A stretch of 64,000 nt of DNA from Selaginella moellendorffii (Eukaryota > Plantae > Lycopodiophyta). Of this stretch, positions 1,914 to 53,592 are shown piece after piece. The notes beneath the pieces were generated by a model. The model was not told the origin of the DNA. It made no database searches and was given only the letters and a program-made list of their open reading frames with translations. The stretch's first letter is position 1. Each line of letters opens with the position of its first letter. Location: assembly GCF_000143415.4 (NCBI RefSeq), contig NW_003314302.1:146151-210150 (forward strand), read 5' to 3'. The position numbers and the translations under genes are program-made.

Positions 1914-2024
1914 GAGTCCGGGATTTAGGGTTTTAGCGCCTTGATAGATAGAAAGAATGATAATGGCGCGTCCACAGCTAGCACCAAGGATGATCTTTGT
2001 CGTTGTCACCGACAGTAGAGTTTA

Positions 2025-2045
2025 CCCTAAACCCTAAACCCTAAA
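2025..2045 (+). repeat. Interstitial plant telomeric repeat (CCCTAAA)x3 / telo-box
   Basis: ccctaaa ccctaaa ccctaaa seen directly. Confidence 0.8.
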
Positions 2046-4784: not shown

Positions 4785-5578
4785 TGAGAGAGCTAGCTCG
4801 AGAACACAGCCCTTCTCCATAAAGCCACGAGCTCAATCAAGCATACCGGCCATTAATCAGCGTGGAATACGTTATAGAGTTTGGCGCACTCGCCGACTTT
4901 CTTCTCTCTCCATCGATAGCAGTGGTATACAACACCACATCCAGTCTTCTTCAAGTTCCAGGTCCCCAACTGGTTTAGTCTGCAGAGAATGGTATAGAGT
5001 GTAGATAAGCAGCTTCTCCTCGTCTCACCGAAAACATGCACAGCATCAAGGTCGTGAAATTCAGCACAGCCCCCTGCGATCATCTGGTTGAGAAGATCGT
5101 ACGCATCGTCCAACCTTGTCAGCTTGCAGAAGCCGTTCATGAGGGTGGTGTACGTCCGGAGAGCTTCCAGTCTCAGCCATCCGGTTCATCGCCTCGTCCA
5201 TCTGTCCCAGGGAGTTGTAAATCACCGTGTTGCTGCCTCTCTTGATCATCTGGCCGAAGTGATCAATCGCCTTCTTCGTCTGAAGAAGAACAAGAGCTTG
5301 ATGTCCTGCTCCAAGGCGGGGTCATGCACACAACCTCATCAACAATCCCCAGCTTCTGCATTTTGCCACACAGCCTCTCCAGAGCAATCTGCACACCCCG
5401 CATGCCACAACCGCACGAAGCGTCCATCTCCTCCTCGAACAGCACCTGGGGATCACAAGACTTGTGCGTCCAGTGCCTCCTCACATGCGCAGCCACCTCC
5501 GCCTCTCCCCCTTGAATCAGCTGCTCCTTGAAGAAGCCAAACAGCTCCTCGTCCTCGTCCTCGTCCTCCACCTTGAGC
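4785..5578 (-). pseudogene. Chimeric deleted inverted copy of the APH-like gene (47832-49220) joined to pieces of the PPR gene (51157-53592)
   Basis: KVEDEDEDEELFGFFKEQLIQGG..RRHWTHKSCDPQV matches the APH C-terminal part; MDEAMN, MAETGSSPDV, MNGFCKL.RLDDAYDLLNQM match the PPR, with many deletions. Confidence 0.9.
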
Positions 5579-5654
5579 ACGAACTTTCAGTTCTTTGCGT
5601 GGCACTCAACGCAAGGAGTCAGGAGGTGGATTCTGCGTCTCTTGTGGTCCTCTA

Positions 5655-6091
5655 GGGAAGCACAGTGTACAACTATATGTATGCTGTGTTTCTCTTGATA
5701 ACAACTTGCTATCGGAGGCAATGTTGCTACAGTCCTTTTCACTGGATTCTTACAAAAATTTTGGAGCAGACTCTTTGAAGGTTTGTTCTGTGTTTCTTTC
5801 GTCTTGGTACATATGACTTACATTATTCTTACAGCTGCAAGCGGAGTTGGAATTCAACTCACTCCAGACAGCAACAACCTTCTGTTGCTGGGAACTTTTG
5901 CTGTTCATAGCCCCGAGCTTCCCAGTCAGTCGCACATAGTGCGGGTGCTTTCTCTTACTGAACGTGATCTGAAGGCTGAACTTTTTGCAACTGCCACAAT
6001 GAGATGCCTTTTGATAACAGGACCTCTTTCTTTGGTCACTGCTGGAGATGAAGGTTGTATCAAAGAATGGCACATGGATCTGTCTTGGAGG
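5655..6091 (+). other. Unidentified spliced gene fragment, possibly WD40-like
   Basis: Two exon-like open stretches with GT-AG boundaries; LVTAGDEGCIKEW resembles a WD40 blade. Confidence 0.3.
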
Positions 6092-46398: not shown

Positions 46399-47479
46399 TC
46401 AAAAATTATTATATAGAGCACGTTTGAAAAATAAATCTGGCGTGAGCATGAAGGCCGTCTTATAGTTATACTTGCTGCAGTTACTCCATAAATTATTCTT
46501 GAAGAAGAAGGCCATCGGTGGCGAGAGTGATAACATACTTGGTCGCATAACAACGGAATGCTTGACAACAAAATACTCAAACTCAACAGAGCCATTCTTC
46601 ACCAAGTCACCCATGTAAACCTCACTCAAAAGTTTCCAATCTGATGTCTCCCTGTTGAGTTCCCATGCAGCAGCAGACACCTTATAACCACCACTTATAG
46701 TCGACGAAACAAGAATCCACCTCCCATTGTAATCTACAATACAAGGCAGGCCACAAGAGAAAAGAGTGCTTGGAAACTTCACCTTGGCCCTGTCATAGCA
46801 ACCTGAAACCTGATCAAACACAGCCACGTAAAGAAGATCAACTCGACCACCAGTGATCTTTAGCGAATGTCTGTTAGGTAATGCAAACATACTAGATCCG
46901 AGCCATAGTCCCTTGTCATCCACACCGAGATCATCAATGCTCTTCTTGCTTGTAAACTGGCAGCGCCGCCACTCCCTACTGATCAAATTCTGCAGGGAGA
47001 AACACCAGGACCTTGAAGTACCCTGTGCATGGATCCACAAGCACCTCTTTCCTTGTGACCTCGTTCACTGGGAGCTCGGGGAGGAGTTCCCAGTGATCGG
47101 ATTCCCAACCATGTAATAGGGAGTGGTGTCTCTGGAGATTCACAAAATAGCCACACACAAGGCCGCAGGAGTCGGCAAATATCCTAAACCTGCAACGTCC
47201 TCTATTCTTCAAAATGGCGAGCCCTGTGGGGAGAATTACTAGTGGCCAAGATACGACAGGGAACGGAACTATTGCCTACAAACCATGACTCATGCAACCG
47301 CGGCAAGCTTCTCCAGCGAGTTCGATGAGTGACTTCCAGCGCTTGCATACAACCTTGCAGCGGACAAGGTCTGGAATGGGGAGCCACGCCAAGATCCGGC
47401 AAACGCACTCGTCAGGTAGCTCGTCACACTCGAAACTCTCAGGAAACAAAAAGGCGAGGCAAACGCGCAGCCCAGCCAC
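46399..47479 (-). pseudogene. F-box protein with F-box-associated/Kelch-like C-terminus, frame-disrupted
   Basis: ELPDECVCRILAWLPIPDLVRCKVVCKRWKSLI, DSCGLVC; coding information split over several frames. Confidence 0.75.
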
Positions 47480-47831
47480 GAAGCAAAAAAAAAAGGCTTT
47501 TCCCTTTCCTCGTTAAATAGAAACAGTATGGCTTAGGCCTTATCAACTTAATATTAATAAAAAGTATATGTTAATGTAATTGGTTGGATTTATGTAGTTG
47601 TTTCTGCTTAGAGAGTACCTGCTTGCACATGAGGTGTTTTTTTTTTGTTAGCTGATTGTTGTACAAACCAAAGTGATTCTCCGGATCAGATTCAGCCCAA
47701 AGAGCAGTAGTATAACCTTCAATCGTAAAAGGTTTTATGCGACTGTAAAGCGCTGACGTCAGGTTCGACCCTTTAGAGAGAGCTTTAATGAAACAGGGCC
47801 ATTTAGGGTTTGGAGGGAGAAAGAAAGCGCC

Positions 47832-49220
47832 ATGGCGGAGCTGAGGGATGTGATATTTGAGAGTTTCCTTTGCTTGCCCTCTCAACTCGAGAGGATGGTT
47901 TCTAGAATTCTGGGTTGTGCGGTTCAATTTACCGGCATTCTAGGGATGGGGGGTTGGAATCTTGTGCTCGACGCGCACAAAGGTGATCAGCGCGTCGCCA
48001 TTCGACTCCCACTCGCAGGTCAGAAGAACCGCATCACAAGCGCACTGGCGGATTCGGGCTACGCCGCGACGCTCTTCCTGTCGGGGCTGGGCATACAGAC
48101 GGTCGTGGCAGGGCCCGTCCACGTGGCATCGCCACCGCTGCCCTACACGCCACGCGGCAAATCCCACCTCACTGTTATGCCGGTGGCAGAGGGCGTGCCG
48201 GCGTGGGAGCTGTGGAGGAAGGGCGCCAGCGTGGAGTGGAAGAAGACCGTGCTCGCTGACTTGGCAGGCATCACCGTCCGGCTCTACCACCGCCCGCTGG
48301 ATTCGATGGGGGGCATGGCGGTCGACTGTGCCGGGGCGTGCCACGTGGGACCGGAACCGCAGAGTCCGGTGTCCCAGGCGATGGAGCGCGGGCTGGACGT
48401 GGGGGCTCTCAGCCCCGGGCCTTACTCGTCGTGGAAGGAGTACGCGAGGAACCACATTGGAGGGCTGATGGTGCTGCACGGAAACAGCCGCAGGTATGGC
48501 GAATCGATACGGGCAAACGCGGCTATTTTGCTCAGGTGGCTGGACGAGTTCCAAGAATCTCGCGAGGGGAGCGGCTTTTTTCTTCACCACCCCGACTTTG
48601 GACCCACCCAAGTCCTGGTGGATCCGGCATCGGGACATGTCAAGTGCATTCTGGACTGGGACGGGGCCAAGACGGGGACCGTGCAGAGCTTGGCCACTTC
48701 TTTCTTTCTCCCGGCTTACTTCTGCAAGGTGGAGGACGAGGAGGAAGACGAGGAGCTGTTTGGCTTCTTCAAGCAGCAGCTGATTCAAGGGGGAGCGGCG
48801 GAGGTGGCCGCGCTTGCGAGGAGGCACTGGACGCACAAGTCCTGTGATCCTCAGGTGGTGTTCGAGGAGGAGATGGACGTTCCGTGCCGTGGTGGCGCGA
48901 AGTCTGTGCAAATTCGTTTGGAGAGGCTGTGTCGCAAAATGCAGAAGCTGGGGATTGTGGATGGCCAGGAGGAGGTTGTGTGCACCAGCCCGCCGTGGAG
49001 CAGGACACCAAGCTCTTGGTCTTCTTCAGACGAAGAAGGCGAGACAGATGGCGAAGATATGGCCGAGAAGGGTGCAACCATGTCCGACGACGACGAGCCA
49101 ACGGGTTCTTCCTGCTCCGAGTCCGAGTCGATCGATTTGGATTTGGAGAGCACTCCTAGTCCTAGCGCTTCATCTAGAGAAGATGTAAGCTACAAAATTA
49201 AAAGCTCAACCTCTGGTTGA
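47832..49220 (+). CDS. Aminoglycoside phosphotransferase (APH)/choline-kinase-like protein, fungal-type, 462 aa, acidic tail
   Basis: GGWNLV, VAIRLP, GPYSSWKEY, FFLHHPDFGPTQVLVDP, ILDWDGA; single long GC-rich ORF. Confidence 0.85.
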   Translation: MAELRDVIFESFLCLPSQLERMVSRILGCAVQFTGILGMGGWNLVLDAHKGDQRVAIRLPLAGQKNRITSALADSGYAATLFLSGLGIQTVVAGPVHVASPPLPYTPRGKSHLTVMPVAEGVPAWELWRKGASVEWKKTVLADLAGITVRLYHRPLDSMGGMAVDCAGACHVGPEPQSPVSQAMERGLDVGALSPGPYSSWKEYARNHIGGLMVLHGNSRRYGESIRANAAILLRWLDEFQESREGSGFFLHHPDFGPTQVLVDPASGHVKCILDWDGAKTGTVQSLATSFFLPAYFCKVEDEEEDEELFGFFKQQLIQGGAAEVAALARRHWTHKSCDPQVVFEEEMDVPCRGGAKSVQIRLERLCRKMQKLGIVDGQEEVVCTSPPWSRTPSSWSSSDEEGETDGEDMAEKGATMSDDDEPTGSSCSESESIDLDLESTPSPSASSREDVSYKIKSSTSG

Positions 49221-49539
49221 CTTGATCTGAAATCTAAAATTCTTTGAAGTTGGCTACTACAGAACTTTGACATGCGAGTGATGCCTCCTTGCCAATTCTA
49301 TGCAATTCTTGTTATGCAGAAAAGAGTACATCATGTTTTTGAATAGTTTAGCTGGTATGCAGCGTGTTTGTGAAGCAGGGACAAACACACAATAAATGCT
49401 GCTTGTTGCCAGGGGTATCAACGAGGTGACGTTTCTTTCGAGTAAAAAGTCTCTGCTACTACAAACGCTTACTTATAAAGGCTGACAGAACACAGGCCAG
49501 AAGAAATGCATGATCACTGAAACAAACAAGCAAGATCAA

Positions 49540-50110
49540 AATCCATCGGCTCGTTTCCACAAACTCCTCCGTGGCCTCCTCGAGCAGCAAACCCCCACCA
49601 GCACCTCGTATAAAACTCCAGAGCCTCGTCGTGGACGTAGCCCGACCTTGCACGCTGGGCACCAGAGCTTGGAACCCGCCCTTGCTCATTCCCTAATCGC
49701 GTTGGTGGCCTTGCGCAGTGTGAGTAAAGGAGACCTTTACCAGGCACAGGATCTTCTTGTCATCTTCGCTCCTCCTTCATCCTTGCCAGGAGATGGCCGG
49801 TTCCGCCCGTGGGCGTTGATCAGCGTCGTGAAGGAGTAGACGTTTCACTTCGAAGACCTTCTCCAGCAGCCCGTCGCGGCCCGTGATCCATGGTGTAGAT
49901 GTGCTGGGTGCTGGCGCTGCATGGACTTGAAGCGCGTCGTGCTGCATCGTGAGCTTGCTGCGGTAGACATCGCAGCGGGAGCTGGCTCAGCGAGTTGACT
50001 CGTTCTCGTAGCCACGATCATGGTGGGCGTTTTGACAGGGCTTGGGCACACCTCTGCACAGACGAGCGGCGTTCGTTCTCTTGCTGCTTCTGTGTTGTCA
50101 CCCGCGGCTT
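49540..50110 (-). pseudogene. Heavily deleted pTAC2-like PPR-SMR gene
   Basis: Colinear pieces VNSLSQLP, FKSMQRQ, HIYTM, GLLEK, NVYSFTTLINAHGRN, EFY..WW..LEEAT resemble pTAC2 as recalled. Confidence 0.55.
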
Positions 50111-51156: not shown

Positions 51157-53592
51157 ATGGCTGCTATCACTGCCCTCCTCCATCCATCTTTATCTTCGCG
51201 TCCTCGTCTCGTCTCGTCTTATCGCCATCGCCCTCCTCGAGCAAGAACATTCCATTCTTCCACTGCAGTTCTTGTCGCCTCCTCGGCATCACCATCGCCA
51301 TCATCGCACGAAGAGTTTTCATGTCAATCTCCATCGCCCGACTCGAGCAAGCACAAGCTCAGGCCTCCAAATCGACTCTCGCGAATGGCCGGCGGGGACG
51401 AGTTCCCCGACCACTTGCTCCAAGTAGAGAGCCTCCTCCACATCCTCCGCTCCACGGCTCCCAATCCCTCCAAGGCCGAAGCTCTAGACGCGTGGAGCGG
51501 GGATCTCACACCGGAGATCGTCGGCAAAGTCATCCAGGCTCTCAAGTTCGTCGACGATGCCGTGTTCTTCTTCACGTACGCGCAGCATAGGCCCGGCTAC
51601 CGCCACTCCATCTACACCTACAACTGCTTCCTGCGTGTTCTCCTCCGGGCTTGCCTCTACGATCGCGCCCGAGAGCTCCTGTCCGAGATGGTCGACTCCT
51701 GGCAGCTCCCAAACGCGTCAACTTTCGCGGTCATCTTGCACGGCTTTGGCGACGTCGCGATGGCCTGCGAGGTGCTCGTCGATCTCAAGAGCAAAGGTGT
51801 GGCTCCCAACACCGCGGAGTGCAATGCCAAGATCACCGCTCTCTGCAAGGAGGCCCGCTTCGACGATGCCAAGCTGCTGTTCCGGAAGATGGTAGAGATG
51901 GCTGCCGAGGACGTGACGAGCTACTATCTCCTTGTTCGTCCGCTTTGCAAGGCCAAGATGATCGAGGACGCCGAGGTGCTTGTCACCGAGTCGAGGAAGA
52001 AGTTCCGGGAACTCCCGCTCCACAATCTGGTGGTGTCCTCGTACTGCAAAGGGAAGAAGCTGGATGCTGCCGTGGCCGTGTACGAGAAGATGGTGGCGAC
52101 GAACTCTTGCTCGGCGGATTTCGTCACCTACACCAGCCTGATCCAGGGACTCTGCAAGGTGAAGCGGCTGGAGCAGGCCTTGATCTTCCTGGGGAAAATG
52201 GTCTCCAAAGGCTTCCACCCGGACGTTTACACCTACACTGCCGTCATCCACGCCCTGTGCGTCGAGAACCGGCTCCACGAAGCTCGAAAGTTTCTGGAAG
52301 AGATGGCCAACCGGAACCTCACTCCAAACGTTGTCACGTACACGGTTCTCATCGACGGGCTCTGCAAAGGTGGCCGGGTCGACGAGGCTGTGGCGCTGCT
52401 GTCCAAGATGCGGAAGAAGTGCGTCCCCACGGCTGTGACTTACAACAGCCTGATAAGCGGTCTCTGCAAGGCCGAGCGGGCGAGCGAGGCCTACGACCTC
52501 CTGGAGGAGATGGTGTACAGCGGCTGCATCCCGGATATCTTCACGTATACCACGCTCATCACCGGCTTCTGCAAGTCAAAGAAGTCGGATGATGCTCTCC
52601 GAGTATTCGAGCAGCTGGTTGCCAGAGGCTTCCGTCCCGACGTTGTCACGTACTCGTGCTTGATCGATGGACTTTGTAAGGAAGGCCGGCTCAAGGAGGC
52701 GATCGATCTCTTCGGCCGGATGATCAAGAGCGGCAGCTGTATGCCGAACACGGTGACTTACAACTCCCTCATCAGCGGCTTCTGTCGGATGGGAAAGATG
52801 GACGAGGCGATGAACCTGCTGGAGAGGATGGCCGAGACTGGAAGCTCTCCGGACGTGGTGACTTACACCACTCTCATGAACGGCTTCTGCAAGCTGGCGA
52901 GGCTAGACGATGCGTACGATCTTCTCAACCAGATGACCCGCAAGGGGCTCACCCCGGACGTGGTGACTTTCACGAGCTTGATGGACGGGCTCTGTCGAGA
53001 GAACCGGCTGAGTGACGCTGTGCATATCCTCGGTGAAATGAGGAGGAAGAGCTGCTCACCCACAGTCTATACGTATAACACCATCCTCGATGGCTACTGC
53101 AGAGCAAACCAGTTGGAGGAGGCCCGGAAGTTCATGCTGGAGGAGATGGACTGTCCTCCCAACGTTGTCTCGTTCAATATCATGATCCGGGGACTGTGTA
53201 AAGTTAACCGGTCCAGCGAAGCCATGGAGCTCGTCGAAGAAGCCCGAAGAAGACGTTGTAACCCGGACGTGGTGATGTATACCACTGTTATCGATGGCCT
53301 TTGCAGAGAGAAGAAAGTCGACGAGGCTTGTCGAGTGTATAGAAAGATGCTGGAGGAGCCCGGGTGCTTGCCAAACTCTATAACGTATTCCACATTGGTT
53401 ACTGGCCTTTGCAATGCTGGTATGCTTGATCGAGCTCGCGGGTATATAGAGAAGGGCTGTGTTCCAAACATCGGGACTTATAACCTTCTCATTGATGCGT
53501 TTCGTAAGGCCAATCGCGATGAGGACGCTCGCGAGCTCCTAGATGATATGGTCCAGAGAGGCTTCGGTGTTGTCCAAAGCCACCAACGCTGA
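51157..53592 (+). CDS. P-class pentatricopeptide repeat protein, 811 aa, Ser/Arg/Pro-rich organellar transit peptide
   Basis: Intronless ORF with many 35-aa PDVVTY..LI.GLCK repeats. Confidence 0.97.
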   Translation: MAAITALLHPSLSSRPRLVSSYRHRPPRARTFHSSTAVLVASSASPSPSSHEEFSCQSPSPDSSKHKLRPPNRLSRMAGGDEFPDHLLQVESLLHILRSTAPNPSKAEALDAWSGDLTPEIVGKVIQALKFVDDAVFFFTYAQHRPGYRHSIYTYNCFLRVLLRACLYDRARELLSEMVDSWQLPNASTFAVILHGFGDVAMACEVLVDLKSKGVAPNTAECNAKITALCKEARFDDAKLLFRKMVEMAAEDVTSYYLLVRPLCKAKMIEDAEVLVTESRKKFRELPLHNLVVSSYCKGKKLDAAVAVYEKMVATNSCSADFVTYTSLIQGLCKVKRLEQALIFLGKMVSKGFHPDVYTYTAVIHALCVENRLHEARKFLEEMANRNLTPNVVTYTVLIDGLCKGGRVDEAVALLSKMRKKCVPTAVTYNSLISGLCKAERASEAYDLLEEMVYSGCIPDIFTYTTLITGFCKSKKSDDALRVFEQLVARGFRPDVVTYSCLIDGLCKEGRLKEAIDLFGRMIKSGSCMPNTVTYNSLISGFCRMGKMDEAMNLLERMAETGSSPDVVTYTTLMNGFCKLARLDDAYDLLNQMTRKGLTPDVVTFTSLMDGLCRENRLSDAVHILGEMRRKSCSPTVYTYNTILDGYCRANQLEEARKFMLEEMDCPPNVVSFNIMIRGLCKVNRSSEAMELVEEARRRRCNPDVVMYTTVIDGLCREKKVDEACRVYRKMLEEPGCLPNSITYSTLVTGLCNAGMLDRARGYIEKGCVPNIGTYNLLIDAFRKANRDEDARELLDDMVQRGFGVVQSHQR

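What the first reader, a model, noticed from the sequence alone, without database searches (positions are those of the whole stretch)
47832..49220. Fungal-type APH kinase-like gene: horizontal transfer candidate
The motif set G.GG.N.V / VAIRLP / GP(Y/F).S..EY / F.L.H.D....VLVD / ILDW.GA is characteristic of the phosphotransferase (APH) family expanded in filamentous fungi, and I do not know it from seed plants. The gene is intronless and GC-rich, lies among clearly plant genes, has a telo-box (TAGGGTTT, 47804-47811) 20 nt before the ATG, and has a decayed local duplicate at 5263-5578, which argues against contamination. The catalytic loop is HPDFGPTQ, with Q where N is usual, so activity may be altered.
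Basis: partly seen in the sequence, partly recalled or inferred. Interest (0 to 1): 0.75.

Follow-up and report, generated by a model that had tools for sequence, protein, structure and literature searches.

The report
Fungal-type kinase-like gene in spikemoss
The spikemoss Selaginella moellendorffii carries an expressed, intronless gene, one of a small family, for a kinase-like protein whose only close relatives are in chytrid fungi, so it was most likely gained from a fungus and then changed at its catalytic site.

Summary
Window 47832-49220 (+) is an intact 462-aa ORF, SELMODRAFT_444214 of Selaginella moellendorffii, which is a lycophyte and not a seed plant. It has the stated motifs, a telo-box 20 nt before the ATG, and a partial copy near 5.3 kb.

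The protein has an APH/FN3K-type small-molecule-kinase fold (AlphaFold pLDDT 89; Z 16-17 to FN3K and APH(2'')).

An exhaustive HMM search of 1.84 billion representative proteins gave ten hits below 1e-10:
- four from Selaginella;
- three from chytrid fungi (Geranomyces, Fimicolochytrium);
- three unnamed environmental sequences.

Every named weaker relative is a Dikarya fungal APH/AIM9-like protein. No other plant appears. In the ML tree the Selaginella paralogs form one clade (100/100) inside an 11-member chytrid/environmental clade (100/99). Strict nesting is not significant (AU p 0.39).

Contamination is excluded:
- plant F-box and PPR genes flank the gene;
- its codon GC3 matches its PPR neighbour;
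- intronless paralogs lie on four scaffolds;
- contigs from four runs cover only the gene.

All four catalytically complete Selaginella paralogs compared (a fifth, broken copy too) have Gln for the catalytic-loop Asn. Two also have Glu for the catalytic Asp. dN/dS is 0.27-0.43.

Verdict: a well-supported, apparently unreported fungus-to-lycophyte transfer of a known protein kind, with unknown substrate.

The parts
47832..49220 (+). Intronless CDS of SELMODRAFT_444214, 462 aa plus stop
   Evidence: ORF list. It is 100% identical to P0001 over 98% of its length. Unspliced contigs cover it.
47832..49004 (+). APH/FN3K-type kinase-like domain, aa 1-391
   Evidence: AlphaFold2 on a 48-sequence alignment gives pLDDT 89.4 and pTM 0.88. 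VIA-align gives Z 16.8 to FN3K 9cxo_A and Z 16.4 to APH(2'')-IVa. Foldseek gives E 6e-9 to APH(4)-Ia.
47940..47966 (+). Glycine-rich loop LGMGGWNLV (aa 37-45)
   Evidence: G40 is invariant in the clade and is G in 32 of 38 distant relatives.
47994..48011 (+). Beta-3 strand VAIRLP. R58 sits at the position of the ATP-binding Lys.
   Evidence: The profile alignment to APH(2'')-IVa 'FIFKFP' places R58 there. The position is R in the whole clade, and R in 21 and K in 13 of 38 distant relatives.
48588..48611 (+). Catalytic loop HPDFGPTQ (aa 253-260). D255 is the presumed catalytic base. Q260 replaces the metal-binding Asn.
   Evidence: N in all 5 chytrid/environmental sequences that cover the loop, and N in 31 and H in 7 of 38 distant relatives. 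Q in all four Selaginella paralogs in the alignment and in P0005 as well.
48648..48668 (+). ILDWDGA motif. D275 is the DFG-equivalent metal-binding Asp.
   Evidence: D275 and W276 are conserved in nearly all relatives.
49005..49217 (+). Acidic, Ser-rich low-complexity tail (aa 392-462). It is present in all the Selaginella paralogs aligned and absent from the chytrid relatives.
   Evidence: Alignments. NG86 dN/dS in the tail is 0.6-0.8 where it could be computed, on 60-70 codons. One run has an in-frame 9-nt insertion at 49039.
47804..47811 (+). Telo-box TAGGGTTT in the core promoter, 20 nt before the ATG
   Evidence: Contigs begin at 47819-47828, just downstream of it. P0002, P0003 and P0004 have none within 400 nt upstream; the broken copy P0005 has a 7-nt core match (AACCCTA) at -121.
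47819..49298 (+). Minimum extent of the transcript
   Evidence: Contigs of X1 and X2 (two studies) cover exactly this span. Nothing lies on 47300-47818 or 49299-49800.
49185..49262 (+). 3' intron of the GenBank model, not supported
   Evidence: X1 record 4 (48757-49298) and X2 record 12 (48749-49292) cross it without a gap.
4802..5583 (-). Collapsed, decayed duplicate of the APH-PPR gene pair. It joins an APH piece (5266-5583, aa 296-404) to PPR pieces, and it lies inside the chimeric gene model SELMODRAFT_419124.
   Evidence: tblastn and blastn. Contigs joining the 48-nt shared piece to 5.2-kb sequence are present in four runs (loose ends).
46399..47479 (-). Divergent upstream neighbour, an F-box gene (plant context)
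   Evidence: Pfam F-box, E 4e-12.
51157..53592 (+). Downstream neighbour, an 811-aa PPR protein (plant context)
   Evidence: Pfam PPR_2, E 5e-197. GC3 is 0.73.

Best explanation
The gene is one of a Selaginella-specific family with at least four intact intronless paralogs, plus a frameshifted copy, a truncated copy and a fragment. The family encodes a cytosolic protein with the fold of the APH/choline-kinase/FN3K small-molecule kinases.

Origin. The family most likely entered the Selaginella lineage once, by horizontal transfer from a chytrid-like early-diverging fungus. It then acquired plant codon usage, plant promoter elements (here a telo-box) and an acidic Ser-rich tail, and spread by segmental duplication together with the neighbouring PPR gene.

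Mechanism (inferred, not shown). The protein binds a nucleotide between its two lobes, using the Gly-rich loop and R58. It transfers the gamma-phosphate to a hydroxyl of an unknown small molecule, with D255 as base and D275 plus Q260 holding the metal. The Asn-to-Gln change is shared by all the paralogs that keep the loop, and two paralogs also have Asp-to-Glu. Each change lengthens the side chain by one methylene. This points to a remodelled active site, meaning altered donor, metal or substrate geometry or much lower turnover, rather than free decay.
For: Identity and family:
- The protein is SELMODRAFT_444214, and the only word-search hits are S. moellendorffii paralogs.
- The exhaustive HMM search gave 76 hits at E<=1e-3 and 10 at E<=1e-10.
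- Of those ten, four are Selaginella, two Geranomyces variabilis, one Fimicolochytrium jonesii, and three unnamed environmental sequences.
- The closest of these hits align over nearly the whole profile (positions 16-381). This includes a C-terminal helical region that the distant hits lack.
- All five named distant hits are Dikarya: Lophiotrema, Pseudocercospora AIM9, Fibroporia, Mycena and Curvularia.
- The Atlas neighbours are fungal APH/Fmp29 clusters.

Tree (careful ML):
- Selaginella clade 100/100.
- 11-member clade with the chytrid and environmental sequences 100/99.
- Selaginella sister to Geranomyces 87/80.

Residence in the plant genome:
- F-box, PPR and pseudouridine-synthase genes flank it.
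- The paralogs lie among plant genes on four scaffolds.
- GC3 is 0.71 against 0.73 for the PPR neighbour.

Expression: contigs from four runs of four studies cover only the gene, not its flanks.

Constraint: dN/dS in the domain is 0.27-0.43, and dS exceeds 1 between the deep paralogs.

Fold and sites.
Against: - Identity to the chytrid proteins is only 24-29%, and no sampled fungus is a close donor.
- The AU test does not reject a tree with the six chytrid/environmental sequences as one clade apart from Selaginella (p 0.387). The direction therefore rests on the fungal make-up of the wider family.
- The protein collections may hold few other lycophyte proteomes. Even the S. moellendorffii RNA contigs are not among the clusters. 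Absence from other plants is therefore not proven.
- The runs are labelled 'RNA?' by guess.
- Activity is doubtful. Pfam APH scores below its cut-off. The alpha-C Glu is lost (G76), N260 is Q, and D255 is E in two paralogs.
Confidence: 0.68

Rival explanations
1. Same origin, but the Selaginella proteins are pseudokinases. They keep the fold for binding a ligand or a partner protein and no longer catalyse phosphotransfer.
For: All four intact paralogs have Q for the metal-binding Asn, and two have E for the catalytic Asp. The alpha-C Glu is absent and the beta-3 Lys is Arg. Pfam APH scores below its cut-off. dN/dS of 0.27-0.43 is fairly relaxed for an enzyme. A new disordered acidic tail suggests protein interactions.
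Against: The changes are conservative in chemistry (N to Q, D to E). H253, the acidic residue at 255, D275, the Gly-rich loop and the GPY motif are kept across paralogs with dS above 1. Arg at beta-3 is the commoner state in the fungal family, R in 21 of 38 and K in 13. Q or H at the Asn position also occurs in distant relatives.
Confidence: 0.35
2. The direction or route of transfer differs. Either the gene went from the Selaginella lineage to chytrids, or both received it from a third party such as a giant virus or an unsampled protist.
For: The AU test allows Selaginella to be sister to, rather than inside, the chytrid/environmental group. The earliest-branching member, P0008, lies on compact intron-free environmental contigs. 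Its 1224-aa neighbour resembles Nucleocytoviricota clusters by language-model features, score 0.94. A published survey reports one Selaginella-to-fungus transfer (PMC11291939).
Against: All named members of the wider family are fungi, so a plant origin would require a plant gene to sit inside a fungal superfamily. Three scans of viral contigs found nothing. The viral call rests on one weak, feature-based hit with recognition below the tool's stated threshold.
Confidence: 0.15
3. Vertical inheritance. An ancient eukaryotic APH subfamily was kept in Selaginella and chytrids, and was lost or diverged beyond recognition everywhere else.
For: Identity to the chytrid proteins is low (24-29%) and the branches are long. 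Plant sampling in the databases is uncertain.
Against: It needs many independent losses across Archaeplastida, animals and most fungi. No plant, algal or animal sequence is among the ten hits below 1e-10. The clade shares derived features, including loss of the alpha-C Glu and a shared C-terminal helix motif.
Confidence: 0.1
4. Contaminating fungal DNA or an assembly artefact.
For: None beyond the fungal affinity itself.
Against: The gene lies in the same 64-kb window as F-box, PPR and PPR-DYW genes. Paralogs sit on four scaffolds among plant genes. Codon GC3 matches the plant neighbour. A decayed copy is fused to PPR pieces. The sequence is present in 20 runs of 10 studies.
Confidence: 0.01

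Closest known systems
Spizellomycetales chytrid APH-domain proteins (Geranomyces variabilis KAJ3183816.1 and KAJ3149567.1; Fimicolochytrium jonesii XP_052930037.1), all uncharacterised
   Same: They align over the full length, with profile E-values from 1e-14 for the 316-aa Fimicolochytrium protein to 1e-32 for Geranomyces (the unnamed P0007 is best at 4e-39), and share one clade at 100/99 support. They share Arg at beta-3, loss of the alpha-C Glu, GP[YF], HP[DE], IDWDGA, and a C-terminal helix motif.
   Different: Identity is only 24-29%. The chytrid proteins keep the catalytic-loop Asn. Most have a 50-70-aa N-terminal extension and no acidic Ser-rich tail.
Dikarya 'phosphotransferase enzyme family' / Fmp29 (AIM9)-type kinase-like proteins (Pfam PF01636)
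   Same: They are the nearest clusters by ESM features (0.98) and by structure (TM 0.75/0.71 over 348 residues). They share GPF, HPDxxxxN-type and IDW[DE] motifs.
   Different: The best profile E-value is only about 4e-8, and it covers profile positions about 115-335. These proteins keep the alpha-C Glu (33 of 38) and the Asn (31 of 38).
Solved small-molecule kinases: human FN3K (9cxo), APH(2'')-IVa (4de4, 4dta), APH(4)-Ia (3w0q), macrolide phosphotransferases, and the ACAD10/11-type APH domain (3dxp)
   Same: They share the bilobal fold: Z 15-17, 273-297 residues aligned, rmsd 3.7-5.2 A. Foldseek E-values are around 1e-8. The profile hit to 3dxp has E 7.5e-14.
   Different: Identity is 9-15%. 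The window protein is about 90 residues longer and carries extra C-terminal helices. It has R58 for the ATP Lys, G76 for the alpha-C Glu and Q260 for the Asn. No substrate can be inferred.
Other reported fungus-plant exchanges involving non-seed plants, for example Tcn1-like chromoviruses shared by basidiomycetes and Selaginella or mosses (PMC2864245)
   Same: An interkingdom distribution limited to fungi and non-seed plants.
   Different: Those are retrotransposons, and their authors left retention versus transfer open. This is a cellular enzyme-type gene whose nearest kin are chytrids.

Membership tests
Pfam PF01636 APH (phosphotransferase enzyme family; CAK group of kinase-like proteins) | Score at or above Pfam's gathering threshold (23.2 bits) | tested here: not met
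   The window protein scores 14.6 bits, E 0.029, on aa 233-284 only. Its relatives P0008 (55.4), P0009 (27.5) and P0007 (27.2) pass, so membership is transitive.
Pfam PF01636 APH (phosphotransferase enzyme family; CAK group of kinase-like proteins) | Bilobal eukaryotic-like-kinase fold of the APH/ChoK/FN3K type | tested here: met
   Model pLDDT 89.4. Z 16.8 to FN3K and 16.4 to APH(2'')-IVa over 273-286 residues.
Pfam PF01636 APH (phosphotransferase enzyme family; CAK group of kinase-like proteins) | Catalytic loop HxDxxxxN (Brenner motif) | tested here: not met
   The loop is H253-P-D255-FGPT-Q260. H and D are present, and Asn is replaced by Gln in all Selaginella paralogs that keep the loop. 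D is E in P0003, P0004 and P0005.
Pfam PF01636 APH (phosphotransferase enzyme family; CAK group of kinase-like proteins) | Metal-binding Asp of the DFG-equivalent motif (IDW[DE]) | tested here: met
   ILDWDGA is present, and D275 is conserved in the four Selaginella paralogs in A4 and in 37 of 38 distant relatives.
Pfam PF01636 APH (phosphotransferase enzyme family; CAK group of kinase-like proteins) | Beta-3 Lys paired with the alpha-C Glu | tested here: not met
   R58 stands at the Lys position, as in 21 of 38 distant relatives. G76 stands at the Glu position, which is lost in the whole chytrid plus Selaginella clade.
Pfam PF01636 APH (phosphotransferase enzyme family; CAK group of kinase-like proteins) | ATP- or GTP-dependent phosphorylation of a small molecule | not testable with these tools
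   This needs a biochemical assay.
Fungal APH / Fmp29(AIM9)-like subgroup | Nearest relatives by sequence profile, language-model features and structure are fungal members | tested here: met
   Every named relative outside Selaginella is a fungus (8 of 8).
Horizontally transferred gene (fungus to plant) | Patchy distribution: absent from other plants, present in the donor group | tested here: met
   The exhaustive HMM search and three word searches found no other plant. One limit applies: the coverage of other lycophyte proteomes in these collections is unknown.
Horizontally transferred gene (fungus to plant) | Recipient clade nested within donor sequences with significant support | tested here: inconclusive
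   The joint clade has 100/99 support and Selaginella plus Geranomyces has 87/80. The AU test does not reject monophyly of the chytrid/environmental sequences, p 0.387.
Horizontally transferred gene (fungus to plant) | Physically integrated in the host genome and expressed | tested here: met
   Plant genes flank it. Paralogs lie on four scaffolds. Contigs are confined to the gene in four runs; the run type 'RNA' is the tool's guess.

The most novel reading that the evidence does not exclude
This gene may belong to a wave of chytrid-type genes in Selaginella that were carried by giant viruses of soil fungi or protists. The basal environmental member of its clade (P0008) sits on compact, intron-free contigs beside a protein that resembles Nucleocytoviricota proteins. 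Other notes of this scan report chytrid-like Dit1, MltA-like and HET genes in the same genome, and one of them also has a giant-virus link. The shared Asn-to-Gln and Asp-to-Glu changes could then mark a new catalytic variant of the APH fold that evolved in the plant.
Probability: 0.1. Interest if true: 0.75.

Novelty: new member of a known kind. Interest (0 to 1): 0.5.

Why it matters
Transfers of genes from fungi to land plants are few and often disputed. This case has unusually clear evidence: an exhaustive search found only chytrid and environmental kin; the gene sits between plant genes; it is transcribed; and it has founded a family under purifying selection.

It adds to signs that early vascular plants took up genes from chytrid-like fungi. 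It also offers a natural experiment on the APH fold, in which the metal-binding Asn and, in half of the intact paralogs, the catalytic Asp were each lengthened by one methylene.

I found no paper that mentions these locus tags. The protein kind itself is common, and no substrate can be named.

Tried and rejected
- Single-sequence Pfam and NCBIfam scans were nearly blank, and phmmer against the PDB was blank.
- The first AlphaFold run, on four Selaginella sequences, failed (pLDDT 49). A 48-sequence alignment fixed it.
- The word search with the mixed alignment A3 added only P0011. The fragment-length search gave only P0012.
- Scans of viral contigs with A3, with P0008 and with its neighbour found nothing.
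With P0008 alone it gave one weak 30-residue match.
- PHROGs and Pfam scans of the neighbours of P0008 were uninformative, apart from TSP1 and discoidin domains. A look-up of its 100-aa neighbour gave no longer contig.
- The organisms behind the Logan, JGI and ENA sequences (P0007, P0008, P0011 and most distant hits) could not be named.
- Literature searches for the locus tags, for APH transfer to land plants, and for Selaginella-chytrid transfer found nothing on this family.
- YN00 dN/dS failed for the saturated pairs, so NG86 values are given.
- Contamination was rejected.
- GC-richness was rejected as a sign of foreign origin.
Full report
OBSERVATION

The window holds an uninterrupted ORF at 47832-49220 (+) of 462 aa.
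- LGMGGWNLV (aa 37-45);
- VAIRLP (aa 55-60);
- GPYSSWKEY (aa 196-204);
- FFLHHPDFGPTQVLVD (aa 249-264);
- ILDWDGA (aa 273-279).

TAGGGTTT lies at 47804-47811, 20 nt before the ATG. The motif occurs nine times in the window against 2.3 expected. A partial copy lies at 5266-5583 on the minus strand. It is 87% identical in DNA and 76% in protein, and covers only residues 296-404.

The protein is SELMODRAFT_444214 of Selaginella moellendorffii, so the genome is a lycophyte and not a seed plant. GenBank's 478-aa model adds a 78-nt intron (49185-49262) and a short second exon. Contigs from two runs cross that interval without a gap and end near 49298, before the model's stop. The intronless 462-aa reading is therefore the supported one.

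WHAT THE PROTEIN IS

On its own the sequence barely touches Pfam APH (E 0.029, 14.6 bits against a cut-off of 23.2). It matches nothing in NCBIfam or, by sequence, in the PDB.

A model built from four Selaginella sequences was poor (pLDDT 49). With a 48-sequence alignment, AlphaFold2 gave pLDDT 89.4 and pTM 0.88. That model matches solved small-molecule kinases over nearly its whole length:
- human FN3K, Z 16.8 (273 residues aligned, rmsd 3.7 A);
- APH(2'')-IVa, Z 16.4;
- APH(4)-Ia, macrolide phosphotransferases and the ACAD10/11-type APH domain 3dxp, Z about 15.

A profile of the alignment hits 3dxp at E 7.5e-14. The ESM Atlas places the protein next to Basidiomycota and Ascomycota 'phosphotransferase enzyme family' and Fmp29/AIM9 clusters, with feature score 0.98 and TM 0.75/0.71 over 348 residues. 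'Fungal-type APH fold' is therefore correct.

WHO ELSE HAS IT

Word-based searches of 5.8 billion clusters returned only S. moellendorffii proteins: P0001-P0006 and the fragment model P0012. The mixed-alignment search added one unnamed environmental protein.

An exhaustive HMMER search of 1.84 billion representatives with a four-paralog profile gave 76 hits at E<=1e-3 and only ten at E<=1e-10. Those ten are:
- four Selaginella entries;
- two proteins of the chytrid Geranomyces variabilis;
- one protein of the chytrid Fimicolochytrium jonesii;
- three unnamed environmental or Logan sequences, P0007, P0008 and P0011.

The closest of these align over almost the whole profile (positions 16-381). 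This includes a C-terminal helical region with a shared motif, LERLCRKMQKLGIV in the window protein against LFFLLKRLHLAGII in Geranomyces, which the distant hits lack.

The next-best hits start at E 4e-8 and cover only the core. Every one of them that carries a name is a Dikarya fungus: Lophiotrema, Pseudocercospora 'AIM9', Fibroporia, Mycena and Curvularia. No plant, alga or animal was seen.

TREE

A careful ML tree (60 sequences, 433 columns, LG+C20+F+G4) gives the following:
- the five Selaginella sequences form one clade (100/100);
- they sit within an 11-member clade with the chytrid and environmental sequences (100/99);
- P0008 branches first;
- Selaginella is sister to Geranomyces (87/80).

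An AU test does not reject the alternative in which the six non-plant members form their own clade (delta lnL 2.5, p 0.387). The shared ancestry with chytrid genes is solid. The nesting is only suggestive. The fungus-to-plant direction rests mainly on the fungal make-up of the whole wider family.

NOT CONTAMINATION, AND DOMESTICATED

- The gene lies between an F-box gene (46399-47479, minus strand; Pfam E 4e-12) and an 811-aa PPR gene (51157-53592; E 5e-197). A pseudouridine synthase gene lies further on.
- The intact paralogs P0002, P0003 and P0004 are also intronless over the domain. They lie among plant genes such as CCT, DDT/WAC, PPR, a malectin receptor kinase, NIF and LMBR1, on other scaffolds or elsewhere on this one.
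- Codon GC3 (0.71) equals that of the PPR neighbour (0.73). The GC-richness is therefore native and not a foreign signature.
- Contigs of four runs from four studies cover 47819-49298 and nothing in the 500 nt on either side. That is the pattern of a transcript. The runs' label 'RNA' is the tool's guess.
- The contigs start 8-17 nt downstream of the telo-box. P0002, P0003 and P0004 have no telo-box within 400 nt upstream; only the broken copy P0005 has a 7-nt core match, at -121.

FAMILY HISTORY

- Similarity between the window gene and P0002 is confined to the coding region (85% in DNA). Both loci have PPR sequence downstream, which points to segmental duplication of an APH-PPR pair.
- The 5-kb 'duplicate' is a collapsed copy of that pair. 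An APH piece is followed by PPR pieces on the same strand. It is annotated as the chimeric model SELMODRAFT_419124, and it is present in the same runs at higher contig depth.
- P0005 is a frameshifted tandem copy of P0004, and P0006 lacks the catalytic core.
- In the domain, dN/dS between intact paralogs is 0.27-0.43. dS is 0.26-0.37 for the closest pair and above 1 for the deep pairs. The family is therefore old and under purifying selection.
- The acidic Ser-rich tail (aa 392-462) is found in all the Selaginella paralogs aligned and in no chytrid relative. It evolves faster than the domain.

ACTIVE SITE (with the alignments)

| Position | Selaginella | Chytrid/environmental clade | 38 distant relatives |
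|---|---|---|---|
| Beta-3, place of the ATP Lys (R58) | R in all four | R in all six | R in 21, K in 13 |
| Alpha-C Glu (G76) | G in all four | T, D, G, G, A, C | E in 33 |
| Catalytic Asp (D255) | D in P0001 and P0002; E in P0003 and P0004 (and P0005) | D in all five that cover it | D in 36 |
| Metal-binding Asn (Q260) | Q in all four (and P0005) | N in all five that cover it | N in 31, H in 7 |
| DFG-equivalent Asp (D275) | D in all four | D in all five that cover it | D in 37 |

It can be sharpened: Gln is a shared derived state of the plant clade, acquired after the split from the chytrid genes.

MECHANISM (inferred)

The most likely reading is a nucleotide-dependent small-molecule phosphotransferase with a remodelled metal site. 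D255 would act as base, and D275 and Q260 as metal ligands. The main functional rival is a pseudokinase that keeps the fold for binding; I put this at about 35%. Nothing here identifies a substrate.

The plant proteins lack the 50-70-aa N-terminal extension that most chytrid relatives have. A cytosolic location is plausible but untested.

A SIDE LEAD

P0008 and its near-identical relatives lie on compact, intron-free environmental contigs, L005 and L006. The 1224-aa neighbour on L006 resembles Nucleocytoviricota clusters by language-model features (0.94 and 0.93), with recognition just below the tool's stated threshold. Pfam, PHROGs and three scans of viral contigs gave no confirmation.

Earlier notes of this scan report other chytrid-like or early-fungal genes in this genome: Dit1-type isocyanide synthases, an MltA-like enzyme, and a HET-domain gene with a suggested giant-virus link. 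I did not test those notes. They fit the pattern found here but are not independent proof.

LITERATURE

No paper in the library mentions these locus tags. Searches for APH transfer to land plants and for Selaginella-chytrid transfer found nothing on this family. Two precedents for fungus-Selaginella exchange exist:
- Tcn1-like chromoviruses shared by basidiomycetes and non-seed plants (PMC2864245);
- a reported Selaginella-to-Rhizophagus transfer (PMC11291939).

VERDICT

- the organism is a lycophyte;
- the nearest kin are chytrids, not filamentous fungi;
- the GC content is not anomalous.

This is a new, well-documented member of a known kind, fungus-to-plant gene transfer of an APH-fold protein. 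It has an interesting lineage-specific change in the catalytic loop, and its function is unknown.

Noticed in passing
window 4802-5908 (-): The gene model SELMODRAFT_419124 (P0012) is a chimera. It joins the APH C-terminal fragment to PPR-derived pieces, and is a collapsed copy of the 48.7-53.5 kb APH-PPR pair. Contigs that join it to a 48-nt shared piece (48995-49042) appear in all four runs, at higher depth than the parent gene in three of them.
   Followed up: partly
window 49185-49262: The 3' intron and second exon of GenBank's 478-aa model of SELMODRAFT_444214 are not supported. Contigs run through unspliced and end near 49298, before the model's stop near 49343.
   Followed up: yes
L009:3191-4476 (+): SELMODRAFT_408475 (P0005), a tandem copy 3.5 kb upstream of P0004, loses its frame after about 112 codons. 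The annotated intron hides a frameshift, so this is probably a pseudogene. P0006 (SELMODRAFT_402399) lacks the whole catalytic core.
   Followed up: partly
L005:1-6298 and L006:1-5800: Environmental contigs carry the basal clade member P0008/P0080/P0081. They are densely packed with intron-free ORFs, including a TSP1 plus discoidin protein. A large repetitive protein on them resembles Nucleocytoviricota clusters by ESM features. They may be giant-virus contigs; this is unconfirmed.
   Followed up: partly
window 1926-2043, 38513, 42440, 43701, 44459, 55601: Telo-box TAGGGTTT is enriched across the window (9 against 2.3 expected). This includes an overlapping pair at 2029-2043 close to another at 1926.
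   Followed up: no
window 48494-48778 and 49039: Run X6 (organism B) holds, beside an identical contig, a second contig with 25 differences in 285 nt. It may be an unassembled paralog or another taxon. Run X11 (organism C) has a copy about 99% identical with an in-frame 9-nt insertion in the acidic tail.
   Followed up: no
L007:12021-12526 (-): The P0002 locus also carries PPR fragments matching window 51522-52916. The two closest paralogs therefore arose by duplication of an APH-PPR segment.
   Followed up: partly
L004:3765-4396 (-): The contig of environmental relative P0011 carries an MscL channel gene split into two adjacent ORFs, which suggests an intron or a frameshift. It also has an ankyrin-repeat gene. 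The organism is unknown.
   Followed up: no
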